Position numbers and translations under genes: made by a program. The notes beneath the pieces were generated by a model. That model had not been told where the DNA came from and made no database searches. It saw only the letters and a list, made by a program, of their open reading frames with translations. From Laetmonice hystrix (lineage: Eukaryota), in NCBI GenBank assembly GCA_965235115.1, contig OZ249443.1:17112001-17176000 (forward strand): a stretch of 64,000 nucleotides of DNA, given 5' to 3'. Positions 5,928 through 64,000 of the stretch are shown piece by piece; position 1 is the first letter of the stretch, and every line of letters starts with the position of its first letter.

Positions 5928-6170
5928 CTGCAACAAGCAAAAACAATGTGATTAGATACATCCCGCTGACCATGCGCAGTGCCTGACAGATAAACAACCC
6001 TGGGCCTGTCAGTTAGGTCTGACAGATAATGCAACCTGGGCCTGACAGATAGACGGTCATCCTGGTTCTGACATATAGGTAAACCTCTGCTTTTTATAGG
6101 TAGTTGCAACCTGGGTCAGACGTACAAGGTTTGACTGGAGGACAGTACATTCTGGCAGATAGAGAACATA

Positions 6171-6613
6171 ATCTGGATCTGATAGATAGAGAGTACATCT
6201 CGGTCTGACAGGTAGACAGGTCTGACAGGTAGACACTAGGTCTGACAGGTCTGACAGGTCTGACAGGTATTTCTGGATCTGAGAGATAGACAGTACATCT
6301 CGGTCTGACAGGTAGACAGGTCTGACAGGTAGACAGGTATATCTGGATCTGAGAGATAGAGAGTACATCTCGGTCTGACAGATAGACAGGTCTGACAGGT
6401 CTGACAGGTATATCTGGATCTAAGAGATAGACACTACATCTCGGTCTGACAGGTAGACAGGTCTGACAGGTCTGACAGGTATATCTGGATCTGAGAGATA
6501 GAGAGTACATCTCGGTCTGACAGATAGACAGGTCTGACAGGTAGACAGGTATATCTGGATCTAAGAGATAGACAGTACATCTCGGTCTGACAGGTAGACA
6601 GGTCTGACAGGTA
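6171..6613. repeat. Compound minisatellite (variable ~60-80 bp unit with GACAGGT sub-repeats)
   Basis: tctggatctgagagatagacagtacatctcggtctgacaggtagacaggtctgacagg... about 6 copies. Explains ORFs 6057..6368 and 6094..6510. Confidence 0.92.
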
Positions 6614-6783
6614 GTCTTGGTGGAGAAATAGTCAGCTCCTCCAAGTCAGTCCCAGCTATGGGCGGCAGGCAGCACACAATTGGAATGCCGCTGGGTCTGG
6701 TCCTGTATTGTACATAGGTCGGTCAATTCTCATGCCAAGAAAGACAAATTGCTCTACTTCTGAAGCAATTAGATTGCCATTAC

Positions 6784-6880
6784 CTTAAAATATTTTTTTT
6801 CTGCATAGATGCTGTGACTTCGACTTGGCATGGGAAAACCTCATTTGTCAATATAGTATCCTCGTTTTTCCAACCCTATT
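6784..6880 (-). other. Candidate 97-nt poison (stop-containing) cassette exon in the EVI5 intron
   Basis: Strong acceptor attattctgttcgtcttgtctttag| and donor TTTTAAG|gtaatg. Stop codons in all three frames. Confidence 0.3.
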
Positions 6881-7613
6881 CTAAAGACAAGACGAACAGA
6901 ATAATACGGTTTTAATTATCAACATTTAAACTACAAGTATAATAACAAAACCAAAACTTTACATGAATTCCGGTGCCAACTTGTACCACGCAAGCCGACA
7001 GGCGGAGGACAGACACATTAGAAATGGGTTAACAGAAACATGTTTGCAGGCCGTGGCGGTCGTCTTCATGTAAATTGCGATCAGATTGCGCCCTGTTCAT
7101 GAAGGGATTGGAAATGTGACGGCGAGAAAAGCAATTACCACCAGTACGCCACCAACGCCTTGCATGTAAATGCCACTAAATGTGCCCGTCACGGCCACCA
7201 TTTCCACGCCAGGCCCGCCATTTGTAACCTCCTAACCCAACCTGCTGTTATGTATTTTTTTTATTTTTATGTCACTCTGTCCTGGGCACATATACCTCCT
7301 GGTTGTCCAGTAATCTGAGCGGACCCGTTTCAATCAGCCTCGGGGCACGTAGTTGGCCAAATGTGTCCACCATCGGAATTCGTTGCCGGGAAATGTAAGG
7401 AAATATCGGGGAATATTTTCCCGGGCCTTGCTACGTCCTACACTTACATATTGGCTCGTACATGGGCTGGTGGTGGGGGTGGGCCTCACTCGGCCTGCGG
7501 GAAGGCTCATCTGGCCTATTGATATCAAATAGCGTGGGTATTTTGAGCATTACATACACCAGTGGACCGTTGCTTGGTTACAATTGACTGTAAGCACATT
7601 TCTCACTCCTTAC

Positions 7614-7640
7614 AGTCCTTGCAGCATTCTCTGAACTGAC
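7614..7640 (-). other. Candidate 27-nt in-frame microexon of EVI5
   Basis: tgaatgcatgcag|GTCAGTTCAGAGAATGCTGCAAGGACT|gtaagg. Frame-preserving and open in the required phase (would add SVQRMLQGL before LEKEY). UGC motifs at the 3' splice site, but a weak pyrimidine tract. Confidence 0.3.
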
Positions 7641-7721
7641 CTGCATGCATTCACCCGCCCATAAAATGAAGGCAATTTGGAAGGCTAACACTGTAATATC
7701 AGCATAAAAAACTGCTCAAAT

Positions 7722-7745
7722 TCCTACCTGCTGGAAAAAAAAACT
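7722..7745 (-). other. Candidate 3-nt microexon (CAG) or tandem-acceptor ratchet point
   Basis: Minus strand gagttttttttttccag|CAG|gtagga: U-tract acceptor followed by CAG (7730..7728) and a donor-like GTAGGA. Confidence 0.3.
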
Positions 7746-9885: not shown

Positions 9886-9903
9886 GGCGCCCCCTATCGG
9901 CCA
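9886..9903 (-). promoter_or_regulatory. CTCF-like motif
   Basis: Minus strand TGGCCGATAGGGGGCGCC. Confidence 0.45.
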
Positions 9904-13667: not shown

Positions 13668-14380
13668 TAACCATTTCACTGCCAGCTTAGCACAATACAC
13701 CCAAGGTAATTTCCCTGTCAGCTTGGCACACTGACAATACACCCGAGGTAATAACCATTTCACTGTCAGCTTGGCACACTGACAATACACCCGAGGTATA
13801 ATAACCATTTCACTGCCAGCTTAGCACAATACACCCTAGGTAATTTCCCTGTCAGTCTGGCACACTGACAATACACCCTAGGTAACCATTTCACTGTCAG
13901 TCTGGCACACTGACAATACACCCTAGGTAACCATTTCACTGTCAGCTTGGCACATTGACAATACACCCTAGGTAACCATTTCACTGTCAGTCTGGCACAC
14001 TGACAATACACCCTAGGTAACCATTTCCCTGTCAGCTTGGCACATTGACAATACACCCTAGATAACCATTTCACTGTCAGCTTGGCACACTGACAATACA
14101 CCCTAGGTAACCATTTCACTGTCAGCTTGGCACACTGACAATACACCCTAGGTAATAACCATTTCACTGTCAGCTTGGCACACTGACAATACACCCGAGG
14201 TAATAACCATTTCACTGTCCGCTTGGCACACTGACAATACACCCGAGGTAATAACCATTTCACTGTCAGCTTGGCACACTGACAATACACCCGAGGTAAT
14301 AACCATTTCACTGTCAGCTTGGCACACTGACAATACACCCGAGGTAATAACCATTTCACTGTCAGCTATAGCACATTGGC
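13668..14380. repeat. Minisatellite, 45/48 bp unit, ~15 copies
   Basis: ggta(ata)accatttcactgtcagcttggcacactgacaatacacccga/ta. Explains ORFs 13766..14359 and 14148..14354. Confidence 0.97.
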
Positions 14381-17282: not shown

Positions 17283-18199
17283 GTAAGCATACGTTACACG
17301 ACAGCTTCTTCCCTGAACTCGTGTCACAATAACGGTTCCTTACTCGTCAGTGTCCCATACTCATCCCATCCATCCACTAATATAAGATGCCCCTGCCCAT
17401 TGAACTCGAAACACGCACTGCAGTATTTAATCTTAAAGTTAGAGAGCTTGCAACATTAAAAATTACAAGCTTGACACAAATTTCAATGTTTTAAGAGCTC
17501 CCCGGTAGGGAAACAAGACTACTTCCTGGTTTTACATTTGTTAAAAAACCCATACATCTTTTATAGATAACAAACACAAAATGATGATTGATTGCGACAT
17601 TCTTATGAATTCATGAAACCTATTAATCAAATGATAGAAACCAAATCCATTCCAAGTCTTGTTCAGACTGAGATGCCGATTCGGTATCGAATTCGTTTCA
17701 AACATGACCTGGCGTTTCAATGTTGACTGATTGGTCCAATTTCACCCCAAGCACCACTGGGCCACTCGCATTGATAGATGACTGACTTTCAAGAGTTGAC
17801 ACAAGTGGCCCTGACACTGGAACAGCATCTGGTCGTCCCTACATTACCATGGAAACAGGACAGGTGGAAACAGATAATTCTATTTAAGGCGATTCCACAA
17901 ACGCCACCCAGTCCCCTGGCGGGACTGACGGGACTGGATACTAAACAGCAGACGACAAACCATCGTTCTGGCCAGACCTGGCGGGAAGGTTTCCACACGT
18001 CCAGGCCTGGTCGTTCACCTGCTCCTGACTAAAGAAGGGACTGATTTCTGTGGGTCTAACTGGTCCAGACACTTCACTTACAGATGTAAGTCTAGCCTCG
18101 GTTTTATGCATATTCCACTCGAGTGGGACCGTCGGGTATTGCCCTCCCCATCCAGCCACAGGGCAAACCGCCTCACTGGGACGGTTTCTCCTGTTTGCG

Positions 18200-19118
18200 A
18201 TGTCCCCCTAACTCCATACAGACACAGCAATACAGACACTTCACCGGTACAACCGTCTGACTCGACTATATACTACGATACAGACAGACATAGACAAGTG
18301 ATGTTCCCCCTAACCCCATACAGACACAGCAATACAGACACTTCACCGGTACAACCGTCTGACTCGACTATATACTACGATACAGACAGCCATAGACAAG
18401 TGATGTTCCCCCTAACCCCATACAGACACAGCAATACAGACACTTCACCGGTACAACCGTCTGACTCGACTATATACTACGATACAGACAGACATAGACA
18501 AGTGATGTTCCCCCTAACCCCATACAGACACAGCAATACAGACACTTCACCGGTACAACCGTCTGACTCGACTATATACTACGATACAGACAGACATAGA
18601 CAAGTGATGTTCCCCCTAACCCCATACAGACACAGCAATACAGACACTTCACCGGTACAACAGCCTGACTCGACTATATACTACGATATCGACAGACATA
18701 GACAAGTGATGTTCCCCCTAACCCCATACAGACACAGCAATACAGACACTACACCGGTACAACAGCCTGACTCGACTATATACTACGATATCGACAGCCA
18801 TAGACAAGTGATGTTCCCCCTAACTCCATACAGACACAGCAATACAGACACTTCACCGGTACAACCGTCTGACTCGACTATATACTACGATACAGACAGA
18901 CATAGACAAGTGATGTTCCCCCTAACTCCATACAGACACAGCAATACAGACACTACACCGGTACAACAGCCTGACTCGACTATATACTACGATACAGACA
19001 GACATAGACAAGTGATGTTCCCCCTAACTCCATACAGACACAGCAATACAGACACTTCACCGGTACAACCGTCTGACTCGACTATATACTACGATACAGA
19101 CAGACATAGACAAGTATT
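18200..19118. repeat. Minisatellite, 102 bp unit, ~9 copies
   Basis: atgttccccctaaccccatacagacacagcaatacagacacttcaccggtacaaccgtctgactcgactatatactacgatacagacagacatagacaagtg; period 102 (18301, 18403). Explains ORF 18106..19203. Confidence 0.97.
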
Positions 19119-20323
19119 GACGTTCACTAGGAGACCAAACACGAGCTGTCGCGCCGATTTGAGCAATATAACATCAATGTATCAGACCTCAGTGGTGAAA
19201 TAGTTATTACCTTTATTGTAACTACAGTCTTGACACCTTAAGAGATCGAGATATTCAGCAAAAGGAATAATTCTGGATGGCTAAATGATTACTTTAAACC
19301 AGTACACCTTGTAAGTTTATGAAATCAATATTGTGGAAGCGGTCTGACTAAATTTACCTCAATAATTCAGGTTTTACAAAATCAGTTTCTATATAAAATA
19401 TGAGTTCTTTCACATTACCACAAAACAAGACATACATCCGGTGAGACCTGGTGCGACTGCAGGTGTCAACAGGCCATTTTGCATCACGAACATTTCAAGG
19501 AGAAAGGCAGACAGTTCTGGCATGAAATATAATCTCGCAGACCACGCCAGTCTGTCTGACAGTACCTGTCGCGTTACCACATGTCGAGTTTCTACATGTA
19601 TATATGCAATCAATGTTACATTTGTTCGTTTGTATTCATAAAATATATCCGGAGCGACTTCCGCTTTTTCCACAGCAACTAAGAACCTATGCCCCCCCCC
19701 CCCCCTCCGTCAGTCTGTCTGACATTTAGATTTTTACAGATCGGTGGCACAATACTAATCCGCGCGAACCCATCCATTTCAACAGTTAAACATTTATACG
19801 AGACCAAAAAATGAAAAGTACTAAAAAAAATAGAGAAATGTAAAAATGTCACCGGTGGCCATGGAAAGTGGCTCACCTCCCACGGGACAGATGCGGCGTG
19901 GCGCAGTGACTCGCTTGCCTCCCGCCGACAGATGCCTCTATCAGAACCAAACAGTCTGACACGTCCTGATCAACCGATAGCTGCCTGTAGCCTAACCCCG
20001 GACCCACCGTCAACTCCACCATACCCAGCCTAAAGCTCTTCATTTGCCCAGGGTACCGAGTTCTGACGGAGGTGGCTTTCCTGGCCACGCTTCGTAAGTC
20101 GGAGACTGATGCCTCTAGTGTTGAGACGACCGTTGGTCCCCTGATAAGTGTGAAAGTCCAGCAGATGGGATAACACCCACAAAATAAATGTGATTGACGA
20201 GATTCGTTCATGATATAGATGCTGACACTTCAAACTATCAAGTGTGCTAACATGTATGACGAGAAAAGCCGTGACAAAACGGGTCGTTTCCATAATGGTA
20301 TTTCTATTCCGAGATAGAGCTCA

Positions 20324-23400: not shown

Positions 23401-23525
23401 ACCCTGCCTGTCTCGCTTGGTCTCTACCATTTCTTCTGTCATTCTCCTAAAGTAACCGACCGACATAAAACTATTTTTTAGTTTATGCTCATCTCACCAG
23501 TGCTTGGCTTGGATATTGGGTTACC

Positions 23526-23558
23526 ACTCACCTGAAACGACACAAAGGGAAAGACAGG
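23526..23558 (-). other. Putative recursive splice site (ratchet point), junction 23532/23531
   Basis: Minus strand cctgtctttccctttgtgtcgtttcag|gtgagt: strong pyrimidine tract + CAG directly abutting a consensus donor, on the EVI5 sense strand. Confidence 0.55.
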
Positions 23559-30188: not shown

Positions 30189-30830
30189 CTGGCGTCTAGA
30201 CTAGAAGATCTCTGTCTAAGTTAAACATACGTCGACAGGAAAGGGACCCATCAAGTGATCTGGCGTCTCAGACTAGAAGATCTCTGTCTAAGTTAAACAT
30301 ACGTCGACAGGAAAGGGACCCATCAAGTTATCTGGCGTCTCAGACTTGAAGATCTCTGTCTAAGTTAAACATACATTGACAGGAAAGGGACCCATCAAGT
30401 GATCTGGCGTCCCAGACTAGAAGATCTCTGTCTAAGTTAAACATACATCGACAGGAAAGGGACCCATCAAGTGATCTGGCGTCCCAGACTAGAAGATCTC
30501 TGTCTAAGTTAAACATACATCGACAGGAAAGGGACCCATCAAGTGATCTGGCGTCTCAGACTTGAAGATCTCTGTCTAAGTTAAACATACATCGACAGGA
30601 AAGGGACCCATCAAGTGATCTGGCGTCTCAGACTTGAAGATCTCTGTCTAAGTTAAACACACATCGACAGGAAAGGGACCCATCAAGTGATCGGGCGTCT
30701 CAGACTAGAAGAGCTCTGTCTAAGTTAAACAGACATCGACAGGAAAGGGACCCATCAAGTGATCTGGCGTCCCAGACTAGAAGATCTCTGTCTAAGTTAA
30801 ACATACATCGACAGGAAAGGGACCCATCAA
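30189..30830. repeat. Minisatellite, 72 bp unit, ~9 copies
   Basis: gatctggcgtctcagactagaagatctctgtctaagttaaacatacatcgacaggaaagggacccatcaagt. Confidence 0.97.
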
Positions 30831-44900: not shown

Positions 44901-45049
44901 ATTTACTTCAGTGCTTAGAGTGTTCAGCTGGCGGGCTCATAGAGCGGATCCAAGTCTCTAAGTGTGGGAGACTTGGTGGAGAGGAGGAGGTGGTATCTGT
45001 GCTACTACCAGTGGTTGGGCTGGATGCGGAGTCTGGGAGACCCGCCAGT

Positions 45050-45076
45050 ACCGCAGCAGCAGCAGCAGCAGCAGCA
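45050..45076. repeat. (CAG)n microsatellite
   Basis: cgcagcagcagcagcagcagcagcag. Confidence 0.9.
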
Positions 45077-46149
45077 GTCAGAGCAGCCACTGGTCCTCAG
45101 ACCGGGTCAGGCATGCTGGCCTCACTCCACGTTTTGGTATGCTAACCTTCCTCTTCCACCCGGAGTGTGGCCGGCTTGACTCTGGTCCTATCTCTACATC
45201 CGTCAGCCCTTCCCACCTCTGGACCTGACGGCTGGCTCCAGCTTCCTCCCTCTCTCTCACACACACTCTGAGCTACCGGCTGGCCGGGCAGCTCGCCGGG
45301 CCTGCAGCCCATACACGGGAAATCTAATGTTGCTTCAGTCAATGCCAGTGGCCCGCCAGGAGCAAGCAGTCAGTCACTGGAGCTGGCTGCTGGAGGAAAC
45401 ACACTGACTGGAAGCCAAGGATCACACGACAAGGTCTGGTTTGCTAACACCAACCCTGACCGAATCTGTTCCCACAGTAGGCACAGTGGTTGTCATCCTC
45501 AGGGCCATCCCTGACCAGGTGACAATACTACCTGTTCACTGACAACCACTGCCGTCTGACATAGGGAGTTCAATGTATTCCGACAGTCCCATCACCTGGT
45601 CGTACAGCCCCAGACCTGTCTAGACGAGCCAGACCTCCTTGGATGATCCCGGACGAATTTAAAGTATCAGACGTCCAATATGACTACATCCACCAGCACC
45701 AACCAGGTCTGGCTGGAGTAGACTTAGCTATCAGAGTCTCGGTGCACACGACAAGCATTGGTGCACAAGACCGCCCAAGCTGCACGAGGCCCGCCTTGGT
45801 GCACTGAACCACCCCAGGCACATACGACCAGTCTTTGCACTTCGAAAGAAATTCATTCCTACCGAAAATGGGCCCCATAAGGCCTTTTATGTTAATTCAT
45901 TGCAACATGCAAGCAGAAATATGACCCTGAGGGTGGCATGAAGATAAAAACTTCCTGACCAAATCCAGCGGGTGAAGAACAAACGACATTGGGGGTCTCT
46001 CCGCCACATAGCAAATGGCTCGGGAAATTTATCGACGGCCAGCGAAGAAAACCCTCCAATGAAAACCATGTCACTGCCTGATAACACAAATATCTGATAC
46101 TTTTGTCGATTCGGCTACATCCATCTCGATTTGTTAGCTAACACAATTC

Positions 46150-47125
46150 TGTCTGCTGGCCAATCCCAACACCAGGTCAACGTTACTCCTCCAGTCTGTC
46201 TCCCTCCTCCTGTGTCTACCAACCGGCCCAACACCAGGTCAACGTTACTCCTCCAGTCTGTCTCCCTCCTCCTGTGTCTACCAACCGGCCCAACACCAGG
46301 TCAACGTTACTCCTCCAGTCTGTCTCCCTCCTCCTGTGTCTACCAACCGGCCCAACACCAGGTCAACGTTACTCCTCCAGTCTACGACCGGACCGTCTGT
46401 CTCCCTCCTCCTGTGTCTACCAACCGGCCCAACACCAGGTCAACGTTACTCCTCCAGTCTCCTCCTCCAGTCTACGACCGGACCGTCTGTCTCCCTCCTC
46501 CTGTGTCTACCAACCGGCCCAACACCAGGTCAACGTTACTCCTCCAGTCTCCTCCTCCAGTCTACGACCGGACCGTCTGTCTCCCTCCAACCGGCCCAAC
46601 ACCAGGTCAACGTTACTCCTCCAGTCTGTCTCCCTCCTCCTGTGTATACCAACCGGCCCAACACCAGGTCAACGTTACTCCTCCAGTCTACGACCGGACC
46701 GTCTGTCTCCCTCCTCCTGTGTCTACCAACCGGCCCAACACCAGGTCAACGTTACTCCTCCAGTCTACGACCGGACCGTCTGTCTCCCTCCTCCTGTGTC
46801 TACCAACCGGCCCAACACCAGGTCAACGTTACTCCTCCAGTCTCCTCCTCCAGTCTACGACCGGACCGTCTGTCTCCCTCCAACCGGCCCAACACCAGGT
46901 CAACGTTACTCCTCCAGTCTGTCTCCCTCCTCCTGTGTATACCAACCGGCCCAACACCAGGTCAACGTTACTCCTCCAGTCTACGACCGGACCGTCTGTC
47001 TCCCTCCTCCTGTGTCTACCAACCGGCCCAACACCAGGTCAACGTTACTCCTCCAGTCTCCTCCTCCAGTCTACGATCGGACCGTCTGTCTCCCTCCTCC
47101 TGTGTCTACCAACCGGCCCAATACC
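46150..47125. repeat. Modular minisatellite (constant core + variable linker modules)
   Basis: Core accaaccggcccaacaccaggtcaacgttactcctccagtct, joined by combinations of gtctccctcctcctgtgtct, acgaccggaccgtct and cctcctccagtct. Explains ORFs 46131..47141, 46274..47185 and 46336..47478. Confidence 0.95.
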
Positions 47126-47490
47126 AAGGTCATCCGAGTAATTCTCCTTCAAAGATTGCCTATACCTTCAAGGTTAATTCACTAACCCGTAACTTGAGCA
47201 CATGCAATCAAATAAAGGCGGTTTTTTTTCTGGGTGACCGTAGATTGTTCTACTCGATCATGTTGGAGCTGATCAAACAATCTTATCTCAAATTCTTTAT
47301 CATAAACAACGCACCACAAAGACACCTGAGACTCCAATCTTACTTATCCACACGGATATATGATGAAACATTACTAAAGGCAAAGGGAGAAAATCAGCCA
47401 ACGTTCCTGCAGTGGCTGATTAAAAAATTCTATGTTTATAAGCGTAGTGATTCACTCACAAGGCATCTGAACTGTTGACACAATCTTACT

Positions 47491-47508
47491 ACCGCCACCT
47501 AGTGGCCA
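47491..47508 (-). promoter_or_regulatory. Strong CTCF-like motif
   Basis: Minus strand TGGCCACTAGGTGGCGGT, near-consensus. Confidence 0.55.
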
Positions 47509-47711
47509 TCTGGGACACCAGTACCTTTCCATCCACTGTGAGTCACCACATCACAAAGTCCACAAATCGTCATCGGCTCCACGGCCGGCCACTCTATAGA
47601 GTACCTCAGACCGCTATCAGACAGTCTGTTTTCTTTTCTGTTCATTATATTAAAGACGCACACTGTTATATCAACGTCCTACAGCAGGAAAAAAAGGAAA
47701 ATCAAAACTGA

Positions 47712-47836
47712 ATTCAGTTTTAAGTCATAGGGGACTGACTGTACCAGTCCATGAACTTGTTTTAAGTCACAGGGGACCGACTGTACCTCAGTCCTGGAAT
47801 TTGTTTTACGTCATAGGGGACCGACTGTACCAGTCC
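47712..47836. repeat. Degenerate tandem repeat, ~43 bp unit, 3 copies
   Basis: ttttaagtcataggggac(c/t)gactgtaccagtcc... Confidence 0.85.
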
Positions 47837-48008
47837 AAGTACATTTCCTGAAAATTTATTTAACGGTTACAACACTGAAATACTTTATCCTAACCAAAGA
47901 AAAACCCCGCATATTCCAAATCAATTATTTGAAGAACTTGGAAATATAAGAATATTAGAATGTTTAAAGCACTCACCAGTCACAACTATCTCATTGCAAA
48001 GAATCTTG

Positions 48009-48035
48009 ACTTACCTGCAAAGATAAAAGAAATGG
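48009..48035 (-). other. Putative recursive splice site (ratchet point), junction 48015/48014
   Basis: Minus strand ccatttcttttatctttgcag|gtaagt: strong U-rich tract + CAG directly abutting the perfect donor GTAAGT, on the EVI5 sense strand. Confidence 0.6.
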
Positions 48036-49204
48036 AAAAATAAGTCACACATTTTTCTTCACAGATTCTTATTCAGTTGTACAATTGAATACAACATATG
48101 AAATATTTATCAGGTATTTGAGTTTAATTTGCCGATTGGTTTATATGATCTGGAGCTGCCGGGTTGTTTTGTTGATTGGCTGTGTGTATGTCCGCGACTG
48201 GTGGCAGAGAAAGGTCGGAGGAGACAACCTGTTCGGTGCCACGGCTCACCAGGCCAGGGTGATGAAAGGCTGCAGTCCGACCACAGCCTCGTATCTCACT
48301 GCGGAATCTGGCCTCCAAACCTCCCGCCACCCGCCACCAATATCCCAACTCGTCTCCGGTGAATAAATCATTACCAGCCAAGCGACCATCAATTCTCATG
48401 CTATTGACAAAATTCTTCCAGTTAGCTCAATGATCTGTGTAATACTAAATGTCTGTAGACTTTGCCTATAGACCCAAAGTTATTCATGGCACGCTGACTT
48501 TACCTCTATACTGAACCTAACAGTACGGTCACATTAAAAAACATCCTTTATACATAATTCTTGATGAGAGTCAATGAAGCATACAGAAGTAATGTATACG
48601 TAATCAGATCCTACTGATGGCCTTCACCCGTGCCGGGACTCAGGGATGTCATACGTCATACACTACACTTTCCTCCCCAAACATCTGCCGGTTAAGTGGC
48701 TCCTTTGTGTGCCTTCTCTCCTTTGACCACGACTATACCTGCCCTTGCCATCCTCACAACTCCAGCACATGATCCATTGCACTGACCCTCCAGGCCGTGA
48801 CCTTCAAACCCCTACAGGAGGAATCATTGCTACACCGTGTTCTCCCGGACGCCGGAAGTCCGGCGGCACCCCAAGCAAATTCTATGTCTGATTGAGCGCC
48901 CCTGGCCGGATATTCTTGATACCACTTAGGCCACACGACAGGGACCCTTCAGCCTGGGAGTGCTCGGAGTTTAGAGGGGGGGGCTGGCCCTCCCCAGATC
49001 GACCTACAGACGGCCTGAGTCGAGCCAATTTTCTCACCAAATTTTGTGTGTCTATTCTGATACTCAATTACTACACCGTAACACATGCCCAGCTTCTACC
49101 AGACGCTGTATCTGCCACTCCTGCCCCATCCCCTAGCTAGACCTCACATCCTATAGGCCTCCGCCATATGCTGAGTGCAGCATCTTAATTCTAGCTCCAT
49201 CCAA

Positions 49205-49590
49205 ATGCTGCACCAGCTTCTCTCTACCAATCTAGATGCTGCACCAGCCACTCTATCTCCACCTATATGCTGCACCTTCTACTCCACCTCCATTTAGATG
49301 CTGCACCAACTACTCTTGCTGCACCAGCTACTCTTGTCGCACCAGCTACTCTTGCTGCACCAGCTACTCTTGCTGCACCAGCTACTCTTGTCGCACCAGC
49401 TACTCTTGCTGCACCAGCTACTCTTGTCGCACCAGCTACTCTTGCTGCACCAGCTGCAGTAGGCTAATCTCCATCTAGATGTTGCACCAGCTACTCTTGC
49501 TGCACCAGCTACTCTTGCTGCACCAGCTACTCTTGCTGCACCAGCTGCAGTAGGCTAATCTCCATCTCGATGTTGCACCAGCTACTCTAT
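49205..49590. repeat. Minisatellite, 18 bp core with ctccatctagat junction module
   Basis: gctgcaccagctactctt / gtcgcaccagctactctt repeats. Explains ORFs 49236..49478 and 49267..49467. Confidence 0.93.
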
Positions 49591-52500
49591 CAGGGCCCGG
49601 ACAGAGCGAGCAGTGCCACACTACCACCAGCTCCTCACTGGGACATCCATCAGAGACCAACCAGACAACCGCTCCTATGGCAGCCACCTCTGGATGGCTG
49701 GTCACGCCTACCCAACATGTCCATCCCTGACACGGACAGTCAATGTAAAGTGTAGAAAAGACTAACTGCACCATTCGACAAGGACTTCACCCCGTCTGCC
49801 CTATGGTCCCAGCCTCTATTCTCTCCGCCGAGTGGTATGACTACTGCGTCCCGCAGTAGATTGAAAGGTCTTTGGAAGGTGAACCACGACTAGATTGGTT
49901 TGCCTGCTACAGCAATAACCAGTAAAGCTGTCTTGTGAACTGCGAAGTGTAGGCCATCAATGCTATTGAGTTAACGTACACTACGTCGCAAACGTCATAG
50001 AACCTTTGTTACGTCACAGGAATGATCGGTATTGTCATCTCGTCAAAACTTGTGAAAATCTAAAACCTGAATGTTAACTTGAATCCCAAATTATCACCTT
50101 CGGCCTAATTTATCACAATTGGTAGTAGGAAGTACCTCGCACATACTGAGATAGACGCTTAACTTCCCTTTCAACTGCCTCTTCTGTGTCCCTCCAATGA
50201 AAAGGGGTTATCTGATCAAGGCTACACCAATCCTTTGATTCTGAAGAGAGGCACGTTAGCCCCCGATCTAATCGGACCTCCAATAACAACAACTTCAGCC
50301 CACGTCACGCCAGGTGCCCATGTCTCCGTGGGCGAACCTCTATTGGAGACGACATCATCAAAATAAGTTGGCACCAAATCACGAGGAAATGCCAGCAGCC
50401 ATGTCCAAACGTGGTGTGACCTTTCAGGGGAATGGCACGGAGGTAGAATATGAGAGGGAAGTTACACCCACCCAACTGGTTCAACAGGGGTACTCAAGGT
50501 GATGGTGGAAGGAGGGGTTGTGGTTAAGCCCCTTGTCCACCCTGTTACAATCACTTAACAGTCTCCTTTGATGGAGTACCGCAATTCTTGTTTTAAGCAA
50601 TGAATGATTGAAATCCGAACATTACATCCTAATTGCGCCATTCTCTCACGGTCCTTAAACTGAGAAAGTACGGGTTCTCCACCATTAATCTGGACCTGCC
50701 AAATCTCCGGGCAGGCTCACTATGGCGGGAATACTCCCACACTGCCCTTCAAACACCCTTCAAATCTGTTGTGTTCTCCGCCACCTGAGTACAAGTGGGA
50801 GCTGGGCAGGGGCCCCTAGCAAGCGTTCTTGTCAAGGTCCCTCTGAGATCACTTGAACAAATCTGTTGGCTCTCCCGGCAACCAGTATCAACACGCAAAA
50901 CACCAGGATTGGATCACTAATTTGTTTCCATGAAATGTGCACTGTAATATTTTAAAAGGATTAAGCTCGTAATTTGCAGTGGTCTGACGATTTAAATAGT
51001 TCGAGTGCCGTTGTGCATTCACGCCATAGGATTACCATGTTAATTCTGATTGTAAATATTAATTTTCATATTCCCAGGCCATCAAAGGCTGAAAAAAAAG
51101 TCAAGCAAGCTAAGTTTCTGAAAATGGAGCACTTGAGATGACAGCCGTAGTCGGTTCCATTTATTCGTGATTACCATTGCATGTAGAAAGAAGGTTATCA
51201 CACAACGGCTCCCGTAATTCCAGATATTGAAATCCAACCTTTTTCCCCGCCATCTGCAGTGATGGAATACCTCAAAGCAAAAATCTCCAAGCTAAAGTTT
51301 GAAAACCTTAACAAGTTTTCCGTTTCAGTCAAACTTGATCCACATTTCAGTCAATAGAACCCGCCCACAAAGTCAAATAAAACATGACAATCAGCAGCAT
51401 AATTTCCTGACTGGAAAAAGCCTCGAGTGTGCTCACGGTATAAGCCGGGCTCGGACTGGCTGAAGTAGTATTGTGAAGTTAAGTGCACCAGGCAGTCGTA
51501 ATTTCATTGTCGTGGTTCCAAGTGGCTGGCGTTATTGCCCCTCGTGTACCGGTACGGCGTACCGAGGATCATTTATCAAAAGACACCTGGTTCAATTCTT
51601 ACTCTAATCCATTCTTCCTGTAATGCCGTAAGTGGTTATACGAAAACACTTATTACCTGCACGGCTTTCACACATACAGAACCGGGTAGGACAAAGGTAC
51701 CATGGGTTCACTCGCAGACCTACCATTGCCCCCAGGTCTGGCTCCGTGCGTAGATTAAGATAGTCCATGTGGTCCTTCACATGTCACGAACTGCCCGAGC
51801 CACTCCATACGCGATGAGTTTAAAAGTCCCGAAGGACTAACATGTAAAGTAGACTGCCAACTCGTTGCTCACAGCGCCCAAATTTAAATGATACAGTCAC
51901 TGTGTTCCACGCAACGGTTTCTGCATGCACGTGCACATTACAGAAATGAATTACAAGGAATCGGAACAAATTGTTTTCAATCGAGATCAACTGACATGTG
52001 TAGCCGTCGGTTTGCATGCAACTCAGATCTCCAGTAACAGATTGCGTGCGACAGATTGCCTGCCGTCACTCGACTTTCGCAGAACTAGTCAGGCCAGGCC
52101 ATCAGAACATCACCACCAGACCAATCTTCACCCCAAACTCATTTATCTTTTAACTACAAAGACCGAAAGACTGACTGACGGAAGAAAGAAGGGAAAGAAG
52201 ATAAGAAACAAGGAAAGAACGAACAAAAACACTGGTTTATACATTTTACCTAAGATACCAGGAACGGTCAGGCGTGAATGTTGTCTGAGACATTCAATTC
52301 ACCGGCAACTCACAGGGGTAATCTAAAGAAGTACAGCCACAAATGAAGTCTACTCGATGCATATTACATGAATCCACTGGGCAGACTAGGATGTCCGGGA
52401 GGTCCTAGAAAAACTTTGAATATTCTATTTGCTACGAGATTCAATTGTCACCTAACATCTACCCGATCAAACCCGCCACCGGCCTTTATATAATGTACAC

Positions 52501-55555: not shown

Positions 55556-56053
55556 CCCTCCCAACCACCACCACTACCCGTGTCAACCCCTACTCACTCG
55601 GTCAGCGCACGGACCCATTATAACGGGACTGTGTAACGCTGGTACCGGCGATACATGTAGTCAGTTCTGGCTGTCAGTGGGGTAGGGGGTGGGGGCTACC
55701 TGCCCTTGTGGAGGGCCTGGACAGTGGGGCCCGATTACCACATGGCTAACCACCCCAACCAATGGGTGACCTGGACTGTATGGCTTCCGGATCTGATAGG
55801 GACATTACAGTGGCGAACATTGTACCAGGATACGGCAGGGGGACGAGGGGAGGTGATTACTTGCGACGATCATTTTACGACAGCTATTACCGTCAGGAGT
55901 CGAGAGCTGATGCTGCAAGCTTCGTAGATAAAAACTCGCGTGCCGCGCAATCCATCCTCACCTAACTCCTTGTGATGGTCGCTCCTATTAAACAGACAGC
56001 TACGGTCACCTTATACAGTCTGGCCCTGTAACGTCAGCCCAGGGAATCTATTG

Positions 56054-56484
56054 GAACCACCTCGAGTCTGGGACCACCTCGGGTCTGGGACCACCTCGGG
56101 TCTGGGAGCACCTCGAGTCTGGGAGCACCTCGAGTCTGGGACCACCTCGGGTCTGGGACCACCTCGAGTCTGGGAGCACCTCGGGTCTGGGAGCACCTCG
56201 AGTTGGGACCACCTCGAGTCTGGGACCACCTCGGGTCTGGGAGCACCTCGAGTCTGGGACCACCTCGGGTCTGGGAGCACCTCGGGTCTGGGAGCACCTC
56301 GAGTCTGGGAGCACCTCGAGTCTGGGACCACCTCGGGTCTGGGACCACCTCGAGTCTGGGAGCACTTCGAGTTTGGCACCACCTCGAGTTGGGACCACCT
56401 CGAGTTGGGACCACCTCGAGTCGGGGACCACCTCGGGTCTGGGACCACCTCGAGTCGGGGACCACCTCGAGTCAGGGACCACCT
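56054..56484. repeat. Minisatellite, 17 bp unit (16-bp variants), ~25 copies
   Basis: accacctcgagtctggg / agcacctcgggtctggg. Explains the five overlapping ORFs at 56011..56581. Confidence 0.96.
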
Positions 56485-57544
56485 CTGTATGGAAATATAT
56501 AATTTCCCATTCGGTAACCAAGGAACTGTTCTGCAACCAAAGGTCCTTTCTACAACCACGGAGCCTTCCGGCAACAACTAATTCTTTCTTTCTCCATCTC
56601 GGACTTCCACATCTTCATAGCCGGATTGGCCCCTCATGACCACCTCTTTTCTGAATCGGTCACAGGGTACTCACGTTACCAGAGGATAGGACCTCTATTA
56701 TAGCGTAGAGCCGTCGATTGTTAAAGAGGCTTACTACCTGGGAAACAGACTGACCGGCCTCACCATCTGTACGTTCAATAACACAGCGATTTCGTTCCTA
56801 ACATTATCGGCCGGTACTCACAAAAATACCATTCATCATTCAGGAGACAACTTGAACAGTTAAAGCAATTCCGAACTTTTGCGGGCATACACTCTATCAC
56901 TGTCGAACATAGCGCCAACCTGTTCTAGTTTCTAACATAATCTATCACTGCGTGGCATTTGTTAGCGTACTTTCTCACCCTGCCCCCTCCTCCCTCCAGT
57001 AAAATCTCATTGGCTTGCGTACTTTGTCATACTGCCTTTCTTTATCACATTCTTGGACACACTTTGTTACGGGCCATTCACACTGCGGCCGATGCCGACG
57101 TTTGTCTACCAGATAGTTTCGAAGTGAACGCTCGCTCACCAACCTCATTGTCAGCGTCGGCTGAGATGTGAACGCCGGGGAGTAGTGAGGATTGGTTTGG
57201 TTTTTAAAAGGTGTCAATCTAAGCGGTATCGGAATGTAGATAAAATTTTCATGTTGTCACGTAACGTCAGGACGACAGCAACAACATCAACAAAAACATC
57301 AACATCAACAACAAAACATGGCTATGTCACTAGAACACACACCCCAGTGTTTCCTGACCTGTCACCTTTGTTTTGGCATACATCAAACCTTAACCTCCCA
57401 GACTCTCTATGTATCTGTGAACGATCGTTTTATGTGGGCGTCCACAACATCACAGCGTCCTCTCTCGAGGTCACTTGTCTGGAAGACCCAGACCGTCCCG
57501 ATCCTCCTGTGAGTTAGTCACTGCTCCAGTTCATCCCTCCAGGG

Positions 57545-57545
<1 letters not shown>

Positions 57546-57599
<54 letters not shown>

Positions 57600-58355: not shown

Positions 58356-58382
58356 ACTTACCTGCTGTTTACAGACAAAAGA
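58356..58382 (-). other. Putative recursive splice site or 3-nt (CAG) microexon, junction 58362/58361
   Basis: Minus strand tatcttttgtctgtaaacag|cag|gtaagt: tandem NAG-CAG acceptor abutting a perfect donor. Pyrimidine tract weaker than at 48015 and 23532. Confidence 0.45.
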
Positions 58383-58699: not shown

Positions 58700-58717
58700 T
58701 AGTGCCACCTGGCGGCA
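58700..58717 (-). promoter_or_regulatory. Strong CTCF-like motif in a CpG/CCAAT-containing patch
   Basis: Minus strand TGCCGCCAGGTGGCACTA. TGCGCA at 58682 and GGCCAATCA at 58741 nearby. Confidence 0.55.
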
Positions 58718-60123: not shown

Positions 60124-60405
60124 GCTCAGGGTGCCATGACTGGCGGCCCATTGCTGTGGCTCAGGGTGCCATGACTGGCGGCCCATTGCTGTGGCTCAGG
60201 GCGCCATCACTGGCGGCCCATTGCTGTGGCTCAGGGTGCCATGACTGGCGGCCCATTGCTGTGGCTCAGGGCGCCATCACTGGCGGCCCATTGCTGTGGC
60301 TCAGGGTGCCATCACTGGCGGCCTATTGCTGTGGCTCAGGGCGCCATCACTGGCGGCCCATTGCTGTGGCTCAGGGTGCCATCACTGGCGGCCCATTGCT
60401 GTGGT
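60124..60405. repeat. Minisatellite, 35 bp unit, ~8 copies
   Basis: gctcagggtgccatgactggcggcccattgctgtg. Explains ORFs 60156..60523. Confidence 0.96.
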
Positions 60406-63316
60406 CCGTACTGGAGTAAAGTGCTTCCACTGGGTGACCATTATACCAAACAACCACAGACATGAATCTGTATGCGTCATGGAGGCCTCTTGCAGCCTTC
60501 CAACGTCTCACAGATCCGTCTAACGTCAACTAGACCTTTCCAACGTCGCACAGACCTGTCCAGCGTCCCCATGACCTTTCCAACGTCGCACAGTCTATTG
60601 TAAGGTCCCTTAGACTCTTGTATACATACTCAAACTCTTTCAACCTGTCGGCAATCTTATGTGCTAAAACCCCCTTCAAATGTACGTACCGCCTTTCTAG
60701 TGCCTGGAGCTGCAGATTGGTTTAGGGTTCCACAGACCTCCCCCAACTACCTCTGGTGGGTCAATGCATTCTGACCCAACGTCCAACACCCTCCTACACC
60801 ACACCTTTAGACGCCTGCCAATCTCCAGAAAATAATCATTCCTCCTTTTGTTCCTCAAATATATCCTAGACCCCTCAACGTCGTTTTCTAAAACTTCGAT
60901 TCTGACACACTAATAAAGGTTTCACGAAGATCGAGAATCAGGGAATAACGTAAGACCTGGGGTCGGTTCCTCAGTCGTTGGGCAAGTCCCTTGTCTAACG
61001 TGAGCCATGAATGGACTGCTCAACCGGCCTGGACAAAACGGCTAGGCAAGGACGATGACTTTTTGGGGGTTTCAAATGTGACAAAGAAACCGGCCACAGC
61101 AGACCAAGTTACCAGTCGTCACTTAGAAAACATAAATCGACCACGGCATCTCCTTAACCAATCTTACGTCTTAATCCCTTCTACTGAGGTAACAAGTTAT
61201 GGAGAGTAGAAAGCAATCAATAACCATCATTTAAACTTCTTATTCTCTACAGAAAATGCAGGAAGGTGCATTTCTTGCTCACATAAACATGATAAAACGA
61301 CCTGTTAGGAAGGCTTGAAGACGTTTAACAATAACAATGAATCACTGTCAAGTTACATCACACAGTTAATTACATGATGAGATTCGGGACGTAACTTTTC
61401 AAGGTCGCTCGCTTTCAGCTGGCAAGAGAAAAGTGACGGCAGTTTATTTACAACAATATTTATGAATATTTCTTTTTTTTTCGGGAGTCAGCCCTGAAAA
61501 TAATTCAAAGAGCTTTTGTTGGCCGGATGCCTGATGCCACATTGCATCATCCCAAGGGACAATGATGTGAAATAGTCTTTAACAGTTTGTTGGTGTGGCA
61601 AACTACCACAAAAACCTCATCTATCTGCCATCGCAATGCATGCCAACTATAAGATTTGAAGTCCCAATCACTGAATGTTTCATGATGCAGAATTCGGCAG
61701 CATTCAACTCAATAGCCATAACAAAAATCCTTTAAAAGCCACCCGAGCTGGAAATGAAGAATTTGGGGAAGGCAAAACCAAACTAAACTCAAAAAGGGCG
61801 ATAACGAGATCTGCGCATTTTCCAAAACTTCTCAACTGACTTCGAAATGACCGTATGAATAACAGCTGACTAATACTTTCACCAGGAAATGTTTTGAGCC
61901 AGAATACGCGAAAACCCACTCATGTTTTATATTCCCAGTAAAATCATACACGGGTATAGAGGGGTTTCTTGACACCGCCAAAGGTACTGGTATGGGGTTG
62001 ACCTTCAATGACCTTACATCATGACATGCCGGTCTCCCTGCGGGTGGTGTAACCTTGTGTCCAAGTACCACACATCATTGTATCCTGTATCTCCTGTGTG
62101 CCGTTAGCCCGTCATAAGGGCCCCAACACTGCCCCCTCCTCTACTGACGGGCCCTGTCTGGTATTCCGGGTATGCTAGCAATGTGATTTAATGGCCATAA
62201 CCTAACAGCGGCTCAGGATTGCTCAGTAATCATCTGAGCTGATAAATAAACATTGCAATGATAAATAGGTGGTAAGGAGAGAGATTTACAGTTTTTGAAG
62301 AGTCAGGACACAGTTGAGTCAAAGTGGCTTGTAACCATATTTCCCTTATTCCTGAAGAGGTCTAACAGAAACTCATCTTGCTTTGTAAAGCCCTGCGGAT
62401 TTTACAAGGCAAGTGGAAAGGTCATCTTACTCTGGCTTACAGTTATCGTATCCATTCTCCTGCCTTTCGGCCTGACCTATGTACGACACCAAATCACCGT
62501 CTTAATTCTTTCTCTGTGAAAACTACTGGGACGCTATTACCACCAAGACCTTCAGTTATTCCGTCCCTTATAATAATGTTCAACTTGAAGGTTAAGGTAG
62601 GGTAACGGCACCTTACGGTTCAAAATCATTGTTATATAGGGACATTAACCCCGAGCGGTGAGAGGCACCGGCAGCGAACGCCTCAGACGGCTGGGTTACC
62701 GCCACCTCTCCCTGTATTCTCGAGTCTCAATCAGCCACTAGCCACTGGCCACAATCAGCGACTGGCCACTCCGGCCACTGGTCTGGTCACGCGGAGTCTG
62801 ACCACTCGGACTGGACGTGTCCAGTGTTAGCTCACGGTGACCTGTCGGCCCGTCTAGTGGAGCAAGGAGAGCAGTGCATCATCGCAGTCCAAGCAAGTAA
62901 CCCGGCCGGGGCTGACAAGGCCCTGAAGTGCCGCCCCAGCAGTACTTCCTATATCTACCCGACCACTTTGAGCCCGGTGACATGGCATCTGATGACCTTT
63001 CTTACTCTCCTCCCCCAGGGTTCTAGCCCTCTAACTTTCTCACAATCCCGGGGGAGGGTCCCTCAACCTGTGGGCCGTCGATAGCTAGGTGGAGACGTTT
63101 CCACCAGGACATAAACCTCACTACGATCCCTGTGTACTGATCGTGAAGAGCGGGGAGTGGTGATGTGATGACAGGTCACCATTTATCATTTCATCCAAAC
63201 CGAAATCCCTGCTGACCACAAAATATAGCCATTCAGACCCTGTCTAACATCTGCCAATCAATCCGTAACTCTCAATACAAAAAACTTGCAATTCTCTTCA
63301 GGAATTTGGAACTTTC

Positions 63317-63520
63317 GGATTTCGTATGTATCAAAATAAAAGCTCAACTGGATTCCGTATGTATCAAAATAAAAGCTCAAGTGGATTCCGAATGTATCAA
63401 AATAAAAGCTCAAGTGGATTCCGTATGTATCAAAATAAAAGCTCAACTGGATTCCGTATGTATCAAAATAAAAGCTCAACTGAATTTCGTATGTATCAAA
63501 ATAAAAGCTCAAGTGGATTC
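63317..63520. repeat. Minisatellite, 33 bp unit, ~6 copies
   Basis: ggattccgtatgtatcaaaataaaagctcaact/agt. Explains ORFs 63258..63583. Confidence 0.96.
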
Positions 63521-64000
63521 CTCCTTAGTGACTTTAATTACAGACTTCCTGAATTTGATGCGACATGGTACTACATAATTTAAAATGAAAATTCAATTAT
63601 ACTTAATCATTCTAATCCAAATTTAATTCCTTATACGAGTCCAACTAAAAGCACTTTCCAGGTCTGGTTCTGTATTTTCCTTAAACTGTAGTGATAGATA
63701 GGTTTCTCCCAACATACACTCAATCTGTGATCGTCTTAATCGAGTTTAAAACGTATACCTTAAACTAGGTTGTCTGGAAACCAGTTTGGATTCTAAACGC
63801 CAGTACATCGTCTTCACTCATATTATAAACATCTGCATTCGACTAACATCTACAGTCTAATAAATTATTACAAATACGATTCGACAGTCCCTTTGGGACT
63901 AGTTAAATCTGAATTACAAGCTGCTCCTCAAGAAAAACAGTCAAGAATATTGGAATATCTTGAGGTGTATATCAATCTGCTGTGATAAACTTTGAATTTC

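What the first reader, a model, noticed from the sequence alone, without database searches (positions are those of the whole stretch)
5928..64000. Chain of recursive-splicing ratchet points across a >58-kb EVI5 intron
Seen: one EVI5-like exon at 5867..5927 and no recognisable upstream exon (which should end ...KKMK) anywhere up to 64000. The three perfect YAG|GTRAGT 9-mers I found by eye (58362/1, 48015/4, 23532/1) are all on the EVI5 sense strand and each follows a pyrimidine tract. They would cut the intron into pieces of roughly 10, 24 and 18 kb. I saw no equally good site on the + strand. Established: in Drosophila, very long introns are removed stepwise at exactly such zero-nucleotide AG|GT sites; vertebrates use related RS-exons. 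Inference: this animal uses Drosophila-style recursive splicing in a conserved housekeeping gene. To my knowledge this is poorly documented outside insects and vertebrates. My rough estimate is about one bare 9-mer per strand per 64 kb by chance and far fewer with a good tract, so 3 of 3 on the sense strand with tracts is suggestive, not proof.
Basis: partly seen in the sequence, partly recalled or inferred. Interest (0 to 1): 0.75.

Follow-up and report, generated by a model that had tools for sequence, protein, structure and literature searches.

The report
Predicted recursive splice sites, EVI5 intron
A 101-kb intron of an invertebrate (probably annelid) EVI5 gene carries three well-built, evenly spaced sites where an intron-end signal abuts an intron-start signal and a short decoy exon follows, so the intron is probably cut out in four steps as in flies, but no RNA data exist to prove it.

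Summary
The exon at 5867..5927 and the three sense-strand YAG|GTRAGT 9-mers are real. Their bare count is at chance: 3 seen, 2.85 expected on both strands.

The upstream exon (…KKMKK) lies outside the window, at window-equivalent 106772..106878. The intron is therefore 100,844 nt, not 58 kb.

An exhaustive scan of all 569 sense-strand AG|GT sites shows that 48014 and 23531 are exceptional:
- They have the two best pyrimidine tracts and near-perfect donors (permutation P = 0.0006).
- Each has a second donor 38 or 34 nt downstream, which is the fly "RS-exon" architecture.
- A third such site lies outside the window, at about 80127.

Site 58361 has a mediocre tract, a NAGNAG acceptor and no decoy donor, so it is probably chance.

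The three good sites cut the intron into 26.6, 32.1, 24.5 and 17.6 kb. Control sequence (587 kb of strand length) holds no comparable site.

Genome-wide, 7 of 30 tract-CAG|GTAAGT sites carry the downstream donor. The purine-tract control gives 0 of 27, and about 1% is expected.

No RNA run exists, so use of the sites is inferred.

The scan has already noted the same site type in other long introns of this genome (ephrin, dachsous, RBMS, PLC-beta, srGAP, Eph). This is a known mechanism in a new gene and animal group.

The parts
5867..5927 (-). EVI5-like coding exon (61 nt) encoding LEKEYNALKTKEQEDQVELR. Its acceptor at 5927/5928 is the 3' end of the giant intron.
   Evidence: Sequence read. tblastn with EVI5 orthologues. 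Junction and phase checked.
5928..64000 (-). The 3' 58 kb of a 100,844-nt phase-2 intron (genomic C8:17117928-17218771). The 5' 43 kb and the upstream exon (...KKMKK, donor AAA|GTAGGT) lie beyond the window end, at window-equivalent 64001-106878.
   Evidence: Upstream exon found and junction checked. Nine EVI5 orthologues gave no credible (E<1) sense-strand match inside the interval.
47971..48037 (-). Predicted recursive splice element 2, the best of the three. It has a pyrimidine tract at 48018-48037 (17/20 Y) and a CAG|GTAAGT junction between 48015 and 48014. A 38-nt cryptic RS-exon follows at 47977-48014, then a second donor CTG|GTGAGT with its GT at 47976.
   Evidence: Rank 1 of 569 sense AG|GT sites for both the acceptor half and the donor half. 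Downstream donor scores 6.5 at +38. Single copy in the genome. Present in contigs of all three DNA runs, and none of the 40 differences listed (21 more were not shown) falls in the 9-mer or the second donor.
23492..23554 (-). Predicted recursive splice element 3. It has a pyrimidine tract at 23535-23554 (17/20 Y) and a CAG|GTGAGT junction between 23532 and 23531. A 34-nt cryptic RS-exon follows at 23498-23531, then a second donor CTG|GTGAGA with its GT at 23497.
   Evidence: Acceptor-half rank 2 and donor-half rank 5 of 569. Downstream donor scores 5.0 at +34. Single copy.
58356..58364 (-). Bare CAG|GTAAGT 9-mer, probably a chance donor-like motif rather than a ratchet point.
   Evidence: Tract 12/20 with a purine-rich GTAAACAG and a tandem CAGCAG acceptor; acceptor-half rank 21. 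No donor scoring 3 or more within +10..+120. About 1-2 such 9-mers are expected on this strand by chance.

Best explanation
The window holds the 3' 58 kb of a 100.8-kb intron of an EVI5-like RabGAP gene on the minus strand.

Three sense-strand elements are recursive splice sites of the Drosophila 'ratchet point with cryptic RS-exon' type. They lie at window 48014, window 23531 and, outside the window, window-equivalent 80127 (genomic C8:17192127).

Proposed mechanism (inferred, not shown):
1. As each element is transcribed, its strong tract-CAG acceptor and the donor 34-38 nt downstream are recognised together as a tiny exon.
2. The upstream exon (ending ...AAA) is spliced to the element.
3. 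This recreates a donor, AAA|GTRAGT, at the junction.
4. That donor is used for the next step, so the cryptic exon leaves with the next intron segment.

The intron would thus be removed in four pieces of 26.6, 32.1, 24.5 and 17.6 kb and leave no trace in the mRNA. If instead the downstream donor were used, the 34-38 nt exon would be included. Because the intron is phase 2, it would then read AAG TAA or AAG TGA, an immediate stop.

The fourth 9-mer, at 58361, is most likely chance.
For: Gene and intron structure:
- TBC-domain exons lie at C8:17219114-17222586, and the upstream ...KKMKK exon at 17218772-17218878.
- The window exon comes next. The orthologue alignments run on without a gap across the junction.

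Composite motif:
- Among all 569 sense AG|GT sites in the intron, 48014 and 23531 have acceptor-half ranks 1 and 2 and donor-half ranks 1 and 5. Site 80127 has ranks 6 and 1.
- Random re-pairing of the two halves reaches the observed 2nd-best sum in 0.06% of trials and the 3rd-best in 0.3%.
- The antisense strand shows nothing (P 0.1-0.6).

Controls:
- 587 kb of strand length (200 kb random genome on both strands, the intron antisense strand, and the gene flanks) has 0 sites with a composite score of 9 or more.
- The 101-kb sense strand has 3 such sites, scoring 14.5, 14.0 and 9.2. My arithmetic on these counts gives P = 0.003.

Decoy donor:
- The three good sites have a donor scoring 5 or more at +38, +38 and +34.
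- Only 1.7% of intron positions have one at +25..+60. By binomial calculation from that figure, P is about 2e-5 for 3 of 4 sites.

Independence of the sites:
- They are not copies of one repeat, and the three in the window are single copy.

Spacing:
- The longest segment is 32% of the intron. Random cuts do as well in 2% of trials.

Genome-wide class:
- 7 of 30 Y10-N-CAG|GTAAGT sites have GGTRAG 20-50 nt downstream. The purine-tract control gives 0 of 27, and the background is 0.98% (binomial P = 1.5e-8).
- A looser pattern lists about 42 non-satellite sites on contigs C1-C12. They include both 48014 and 80127.
- The list also holds other same-strand pairs about 24 kb apart, on C10 and C11.

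Match to the published definition:
- Published features are juxtaposed acceptor and donor, a short cryptic RS-exon (about 50 nt) that is usually out of frame, and location in very long introns (PMC8605326, PMC6110457).

Relative with a short intron:
- Capitella teleta has the same intron position and phase, but the intron is 4.8 kb and has no such site (best score 0.4). This fits a length-dependent feature.
Against: - No RNA evidence at all. The only public runs that hold this DNA are three genomic data sets of one sample.
- No conservation test was possible. The nearest relative's contigs align only in exons.
- Donor competition is not clearly favourable. On my generic weight matrix the recreated donor AAA|GTRAGT scores about 4.5. 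The decoy donors score 7.5, 6.5 and 5.0. On donor strength alone the cryptic exons might be included rather than skipped.
- The weight matrices are generic metazoan values taken from memory, not trained on this species.
- The genome-wide excess of tract-plus-donor alone is modest. I estimate 30 observed against about 13.6 expected, and 27 in the purine control.
- The finding was picked from a very large scan, so the tract-based statistics carry some selection bias.
Confidence: 0.65

Rival explanations
1. The elements are ordinary short cassette or 'poison' exons of 34-38 nt. They would be spliced in occasionally to give a premature stop and mRNA decay (regulated unproductive splicing), without any recursive re-use of the junction.
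For: - Each element has a good acceptor, a 34-38 nt body and a good downstream donor.
- Inclusion would give an immediate stop, AAG TAA or AAG TGA, because the intron is phase 2.
- On a generic matrix the downstream donors are as strong as or stronger than the recreated AAA|GTRAGT donor.
Against: - A plain cassette exon has no reason to begin with GTRAGT. All three do.
- Genome-wide, the downstream donor is tied to the tract-CAG|GTAAGT combination: 7 of 30 against about 1% expected.
- Even spacing along a 101-kb intron is not expected of poison exons.
- In flies the same architecture is the recursive one (PMC8605326).
Confidence: 0.13
2. All the sites are chance matches in a long, G-rich, repeat-laden intron, picked out by a scan of many windows.
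For: - The bare 9-mer count equals the shuffle expectation.
- The strand bias is partly compositional.
- Site 58361 looks like chance.
- The genome-wide tract-plus-donor excess is only about 2-fold.
Against: - Permutation P = 0.0006.
- 0 comparable sites in 587 kb of control strand length.
- A decoy donor at 3 of 4 sites against a 1.7% background, on a feature not used for selection.
- Spacing P = 0.02.
Confidence: 0.07
3. The signals belong to exons of an unannotated same-strand transcript nested in the intron, such as a non-coding RNA or alternative EVI5 5' exons.
For: Long introns often host other transcripts, and no annotation or RNA data were available to exclude this.
Against: - No open reading frame flanks any site.
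- No Rfam family or tRNA lies in the window.
- EVI5 orthologues gave no credible sense-strand match in the interval.
- The long ORFs in the intron coincide with minisatellite arrays.
- Three separate 34-38 nt exons that each begin with a perfect donor would be an odd gene.
Confidence: 0.05

Closest known systems
Drosophila intronic ratchet points with cryptic RS-exons (Ubx, kuz, Bx; Hatton 1998, Duff 2015, Joseph 2018, Pai 2018; read here as PMC8605326 and PMC6110457)
   Same: - Pyrimidine tract-CAG|GTRAGT on the sense strand of a very long intron.
- A short out-of-frame cryptic exon closed by a second donor.
- Several sites per intron that divide it into similar segments.
- Zero nucleotides expected to remain in the mRNA.
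   Different: - The animal is a spiralian, probably an annelid, not an insect.
- The cryptic exons are shorter, 34-38 nt against about 50 nt.
- The segments are longer, 18-32 kb against a mean of 9 kb in flies (PMC6110457).
- The recreated donor has AAA at -3..-1 and is not clearly stronger than the decoy donor.
- There is no RNA or conservation evidence here.
Vertebrate recursive splicing through RS-exons in long genes (Sibley 2015, as cited in PMC8605326 and 10.1101/2024.12.11.627982)
   Same: - An RS-exon defined by a downstream donor.
- The recreated and downstream donors compete.
- Inclusion gives a premature stop.
- Found in introns of about 50 kb or more.
   Different: - In vertebrates only a few fully suppressed intronic sites are established (nine noted in PMC8605326).
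- This genome seems to have dozens of sites with a fly-like consensus.
Poison (unproductive) cassette exons
   Same: A short exon whose inclusion introduces an immediate stop codon.
   Different: Poison exons do not begin with a consensus donor and are usually conserved in their body. Here the defining feature is the donor at the exon's first base.

Membership tests
Fly-type intronic ratchet point (zero-nucleotide recursive splice site with cryptic RS-exon) | Juxtaposed 3' splice site (pyrimidine tract, YAG) and 5' splice site (GTRAGT) around AG|GT, on the sense strand of the host gene | tested here: met
   Sites 48014, 23531 and 80127 (the last outside the window) have composite scores of 14.5, 14.0 and 9.2. 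The best antisense site scores 6.3 and the best control site 8.0. Site 58361 scores only 6.1.
Fly-type intronic ratchet point (zero-nucleotide recursive splice site with cryptic RS-exon) | Location inside a very long intron (most fly sites are in introns over 40 kb) | tested here: met
   The intron is 100,844 nt with no conserved exon inside. The length criterion is quoted from 10.1101/2024.12.11.627982, citing Pai 2018.
Fly-type intronic ratchet point (zero-nucleotide recursive splice site with cryptic RS-exon) | A downstream donor that defines a short, usually out-of-frame, cryptic RS-exon | tested here: met
   Donors lie at +38 (GAG|GTAAGT), +38 (CTG|GTGAGT) and +34 (CTG|GTGAGA). The background chance is 1.7% per site. 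Lengths of 38, 38 and 34 nt are not multiples of three. The feature is as described in PMC8605326 and PMC6110457.
Fly-type intronic ratchet point (zero-nucleotide recursive splice site with cryptic RS-exon) | The recreated ratchet-point donor outcompetes the RS-exon donor, so the cryptic exon is skipped | tested here: inconclusive
   On a generic matrix the recreated AAA|GTRAGT scores about 4.5, against 7.5, 6.5 and 5.0 for the decoy donors (and my arithmetic). PMC8605326 notes that donor strength alone does not always decide the outcome.
Fly-type intronic ratchet point (zero-nucleotide recursive splice site with cryptic RS-exon) | Strong conservation of the acceptor|donor core in related species | not testable with these tools
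   The only related genomic contigs (L009, L010) align in exons only, at about 80% identity. Capitella's orthologous intron is 4.8 kb and lacks any such site. Two other haplotypes or individuals keep the core, but that is too little divergence to count.
Fly-type intronic ratchet point (zero-nucleotide recursive splice site with cryptic RS-exon) | RNA intermediates: exon-to-ratchet junction reads, segment lariats, saw-tooth nascent coverage | not testable with these tools
   No RNA run holds this locus. The three holders are genomic contigs at even depth of about 30-60.
EVI5 / EVI5-like RabGAP gene (host gene) | A RabGAP-TBC domain followed by a coiled-coil that begins ...KKMKKLEKEY | tested here: met
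   Pfam PF00566 exons lie at C8:17219365-17222181. Orthologues named EVI5 or EVI5-like come from Amphiura, Capitella, Chionoecetes, Leptopilina and Petromyzon. They are collinear in tblastn, with 64% identity to Capitella over 545 aa.

The most novel reading that the evidence does not exclude
Fly-type recursive splicing through cryptic RS-exons is a genome-wide way of removing long introns in a spiralian, probably an annelid. That would make it a shared, possibly ancestral, bilaterian mechanism rather than an insect speciality. The EVI5 intron would be removed in four steps. Because the recreated donor (AAA|GTRAGT) is weak, the three cryptic exons could also act as tunable poison exons that set EVI5 output.
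Probability: 0.55. Interest if true: 0.6.

Novelty: new member of a known kind. Interest (0 to 1): 0.5.

Why it matters
Recursive splicing has been shown experimentally only in flies and a few vertebrates. The library I searched names fruit flies, mice and humans, plus a lungfish test (10.1101/2024.12.11.627982). No paper in it links recursive splicing meaningfully with annelids or with EVI5.

Clear, strand-specific, evenly spaced ratchet-point elements in a spiralian genome would have several consequences:
- They would extend the mechanism to the third large bilaterian branch.
- They would argue that recognising ratchet points through a decoy exon is old.
- They would give a concrete, cheap test: one RT-PCR per site on nuclear RNA.

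For this single locus the gain is modest. The mechanism is known, the scan has already flagged the same architecture in several other long introns of this genome, and nothing is proven without RNA.

Tried and rejected
RNA evidence:
- The look-up of sequencing runs found only three genomic data sets of one sample.
- Read laying on 45015-51014 showed even DNA-like depth and no joints, so it says nothing about splicing.

Conservation:
- The nearest relative's Logan contigs (L009, L010) align only in the TBC exons.
- P0005 (Amphiura) has no contig on record.
- Capitella's orthologous intron is too short to be informative beyond showing no site.

Background sampling:
The control is 587 kb of strand length, not megabases.

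Genome-wide counts:
- The reversed-pattern control of the pattern tool is unreliable here. GGAAT-like and other satellites inflate it, and the forward counts of the loose pattern are dominated by a 37-nt satellite at C12:26.31 Mb.
- I therefore used the purine-tract control and a sample-based background instead.

Other readings rejected:
- The sites are not parts of a repeat family.
- They are not edges of coding exons.
- No Rfam RNA or tRNA lies in the window.
- The long plus-strand ORFs in the intron are not nested genes. They gave no Pfam match or only weak ones and coincide with minisatellite arrays.

Technical:
- My first dinucleotide-shuffle script timed out. I replaced it with Markov expectations.


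Full report
**1. What is in the sequence**

The minus strand at 5867..5927 is a 61-nt exon with acceptor ttgcag| and donor AGG|GTAAGT. It encodes LEKEYNALKTKEQEDQVELR.

The pattern YAGGTRAGT occurs exactly three times in the window, at 58356-58364, 48009-48017 and 23526-23534. All three are on the minus strand.
- One hundred dinucleotide-preserving shuffles give 2.85 +/- 1.62 matches on both strands, and 53 of the 100 reach three.
- The sense strand is G-rich (window-wide G 16,959 against C 13,106 on that strand).
- Markov expectations are therefore 1.2-1.95 for the minus strand and 0.7-0.9 for the plus strand.
CAG|GTRAGT is also simply the consensus donor.

**2. The gene and the true size of the intron**

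The window is G000:C8:17112001-17176000.
- Pfam RabGAP-TBC exons lie upstream on the same strand, at C8:17219365-17222181.
- A 75-aa TBC exon retrieved proteins that their sources name EVI5 or EVI5-like, from Amphiura, Capitella, Chionoecetes, Leptopilina and Petromyzon.
- tblastn of these orthologues against 144 kb around the window gives a collinear minus-strand gene.
- The exon that should end ...KKMKK is at C8:17218772-17218878, window-equivalent 106772-106878.
- It ends ...ATGAAAAA|GTAGGT, and the window exon starts ttgcag|GTTGGAG. The split codon AA|G restores KKMKK-LEKEY.

The intron is therefore C8:17117928-17218771. It is 100,844 nt long and phase 2. The window holds its 3' 58 kb. Nine orthologues gave no credible (E<1) sense-strand match inside it.

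Other introns of the gene are 0.15-13 kb.

Capitella teleta is the nearest named comparator, at 64% identity over 545 aa against 51-57% for the others. The animal is probably an annelid or another spiralian.

In Capitella the intron sits at the same position and phase. It is the longest in that gene, but it is only 4.8 kb and has no ratchet-like site (best composite score 0.4).

**3. Exhaustive scan of the intron**

I scored every AG|GT on both strands with a generic acceptor half (tract at -23..-4 plus position -3) and a generic donor half (+3..+6). The matrices are approximate metazoan frequencies from my own knowledge.

On the sense strand there are 569 sites:

| Site | Acceptor-half rank | Donor-half rank |
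|---|---|---|
| 48014 | 1 | 1 |
| 23531 | 2 | 5 |
| 80127 (new, C8:17192127, outside the window) | 6 | 1 |
| 58361 | 21 | 1 |

- Re-pairing the two halves at random reaches the observed second-best sum in 0.06% of 20,000 trials and the third-best in 0.3%.
- On the antisense strand the same test gives P of 0.1-0.6.
- With one fixed background, the sense strand has three sites scoring 9 or more (14.5, 14.0 and 9.2).
- 587 kb of control strand length has none; its best site scores 8.0. The control is 200 kb of random genome on both strands, the intron antisense strand and the gene flanks. My arithmetic on these counts gives P = (100.8/687.6)^3 = 0.003.
- Genome-wide there are 6,974 CAGGTAAGT, or 0.56 per 100 kb of strand. 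The three in this intron's sense strand are about five times that density.

**4. The decoy-exon architecture**

Only 26 of 7,527 GT dinucleotides on the sense strand score 6 or more as donors.
- Four of these are the candidate sites themselves.
- Two more lie exactly 38 nt downstream of 80127 (GAG|GTAAGT, 7.5) and of 48014 (CTG|GTGAGT, 6.5).
- Site 23531 has CTG|GTGAGA (5.0) at +34. Site 58361 has nothing.
- Only 1.7% of positions have a donor scoring 5 or more at +25..+60. Three of four sites having one has binomial P of about 2e-5.

It is also the architecture that Drosophila work defines. [quoted passage not shown] Strong donors are enriched downstream of recursive sites (PMC6110457).

The cryptic exons here are 38, 38 and 34 nt. 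Because the intron is phase 2, inclusion would read AAG TAA or AAG TGA at once.

The three elements are not copies of one another (local alignment scores of 13-18 in 400 nt, like the reverse-complement controls). The three in the window are single copy in the genome.

**5. Spacing**

The three good sites cut the intron into 26.6, 32.1, 24.5 and 17.6 kb. Three random cuts give a longest piece this short in 2% of trials.

**6. Is this a class in this genome?**

- Y10-N-CAG|GTAAGT occurs 30 times, and Y10-N-CAGGT 3,301 times.
- With about 1.69 million CAGGT, estimated from the 200-kb sample, I expect about 13.6. That is a 2.2-fold excess, which is modest.
- A purine-tract control gives 27, including one tandem array and a small repeat family.
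- The sharper test is the decoy donor. 7 of the 30 have GGTRAG after a gap of 20-50 nt. The purine control has 0 of 27, and the background is 0.98% (binomial P = 1.5e-8).
- A looser pattern (YYYY-N-CAG|GTRAGT, gap, GGTRAG) gives 147 hits, dominated by a 37-nt satellite on C12.
- About 42 non-satellite sites are listed on C1-C12. Among them are 48014 and 80127.
- The list also holds same-strand pairs 24 kb apart on C10 (8015442 and 8039938) and on C11 (18311180 and 18334945).

So the architecture recurs in the genome. Earlier notes of this scan report the same in ephrin, dachsous, RBMS/shep, PLC-beta, srGAP and Eph introns. I used those notes as leads, not as evidence.

**7. What is not shown**

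- No RNA run holds the locus. The three holders are genomic contigs with even depth and no joints.
- Two of them differ from the assembly by about 1-1.5% near 48014. Among the 40 differences listed (21 more were not shown), the nearest are a T>C at -25 and a G>C at +34. These leave the 9-mer, the tract and the second donor intact. That is too little divergence to count as conservation.
- The recreated donor AAA|GTRAGT scores about 4.5 on my matrix, below the decoy donors (7.5, 6.5 and 5.0). I cannot predict that the cryptic exons are skipped. PMC8605326 shows that donor competition matters but is not the only determinant.
- The native donor of the giant intron (AAA|GTAGGT) is weaker still.

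**8. Verdict**

Two of the three named sites, plus one outside the window, are very probably real splice-signal elements of the recursive type. Site 58361 is probably chance.
- I put 0.65 on recursive removal of the intron at these sites, 0.13 on plain poison exons, 0.07 on chance and 0.05 on an unannotated transcript.
- This is a new member of a known kind. The mechanism is well known in flies and vertebrates. It is not described for annelids or for EVI5 in the searched literature. It has already been flagged repeatedly in this genome by the scan.

Noticed in passing
window 22-918 (+): A 298-aa ATG ORF has a SOCS box (E 2e-8) and a sub-threshold ankyrin-repeat match, so it looks like an ASB-like gene. 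It lies antisense inside the next EVI5 intron, between the exon at 5867 and the exon about 13 kb downstream.
   Followed up: partly
window 1809-63521, e.g. 3575-4334, 13709-14375, 18199-19115, 30186-30836, 37504-38982, 46165-47132, 56052-56485: The intron is crowded with about 25 minisatellite arrays (periods 17-293 nt, up to 30 copies). The longest plus-strand ORFs (3361-4470, 18106-19203, 46131-47478) coincide with these arrays and gave no Pfam match or only weak ones, so they are repeat artefacts, not nested genes.
   Followed up: partly
window 1-64000: There is a strong, uniform strand asymmetry. The plus strand has C over G in every 4-kb bin (GC skew -0.04 to -0.28), so the EVI5 sense strand is G-rich. 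This raises the chance expectation of G-rich motifs such as donors on the sense strand. It may reflect transcription-coupled mutation bias or the C-rich minisatellites.
   Followed up: no
G000:C10:8015442 and 8039938 (+); G000:C11:18311180 and 18334945 (-); also C12:13993217 and 14111218 (-): These are same-strand pairs of tract-CAG|GTAAGT sites with a decoy donor, about 24 kb (or 118 kb) apart. They are candidates for other recursively spliced long introns.
   Followed up: no
G000:C12:26313537-26315939 and beyond; C1:2320168-2321532; C1:3678684-3680064; C7:8365139-8366628: Satellites with periods of 37, 52, about 61 and 59 nt have units that contain CAGGTAAGT. They inflate naive genome-wide counts of donor-like or ratchet-like motifs and must be removed from any census.
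   Followed up: no
L031:2410-7253 (Capitella teleta KB308499.1): The orthologous EVI5 intron in Capitella has the same position and phase (...ATGAAAAA|GTAAGT ... ttctgcag|A). It is the longest intron of that 8.4-kb gene (4.8 kb against 0.4 kb or less) but has no ratchet-like site. The intron has grown about 20-fold in the window's species.
   Followed up: yes
window-equivalent 106766-106771 (genomic C8:17218766-17218771, outside the window): The native donor of the 101-kb intron is weak (AAA|GTAGGT). Each predicted ratchet point would replace it with a better hexamer (GTAAGT or GTGAGT).
   Followed up: partly
window 47092-49071: Contigs of runs X1 and X2 differ from the assembly by about 1-1.5% here, while X3 is identical. 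The runs labelled as one sample therefore carry at least two or three haplotypes. None of the 40 differences listed (21 more were not shown) falls in the 9-mer at 48009-48017 or the second donor at 47971-47979.
   Followed up: partly
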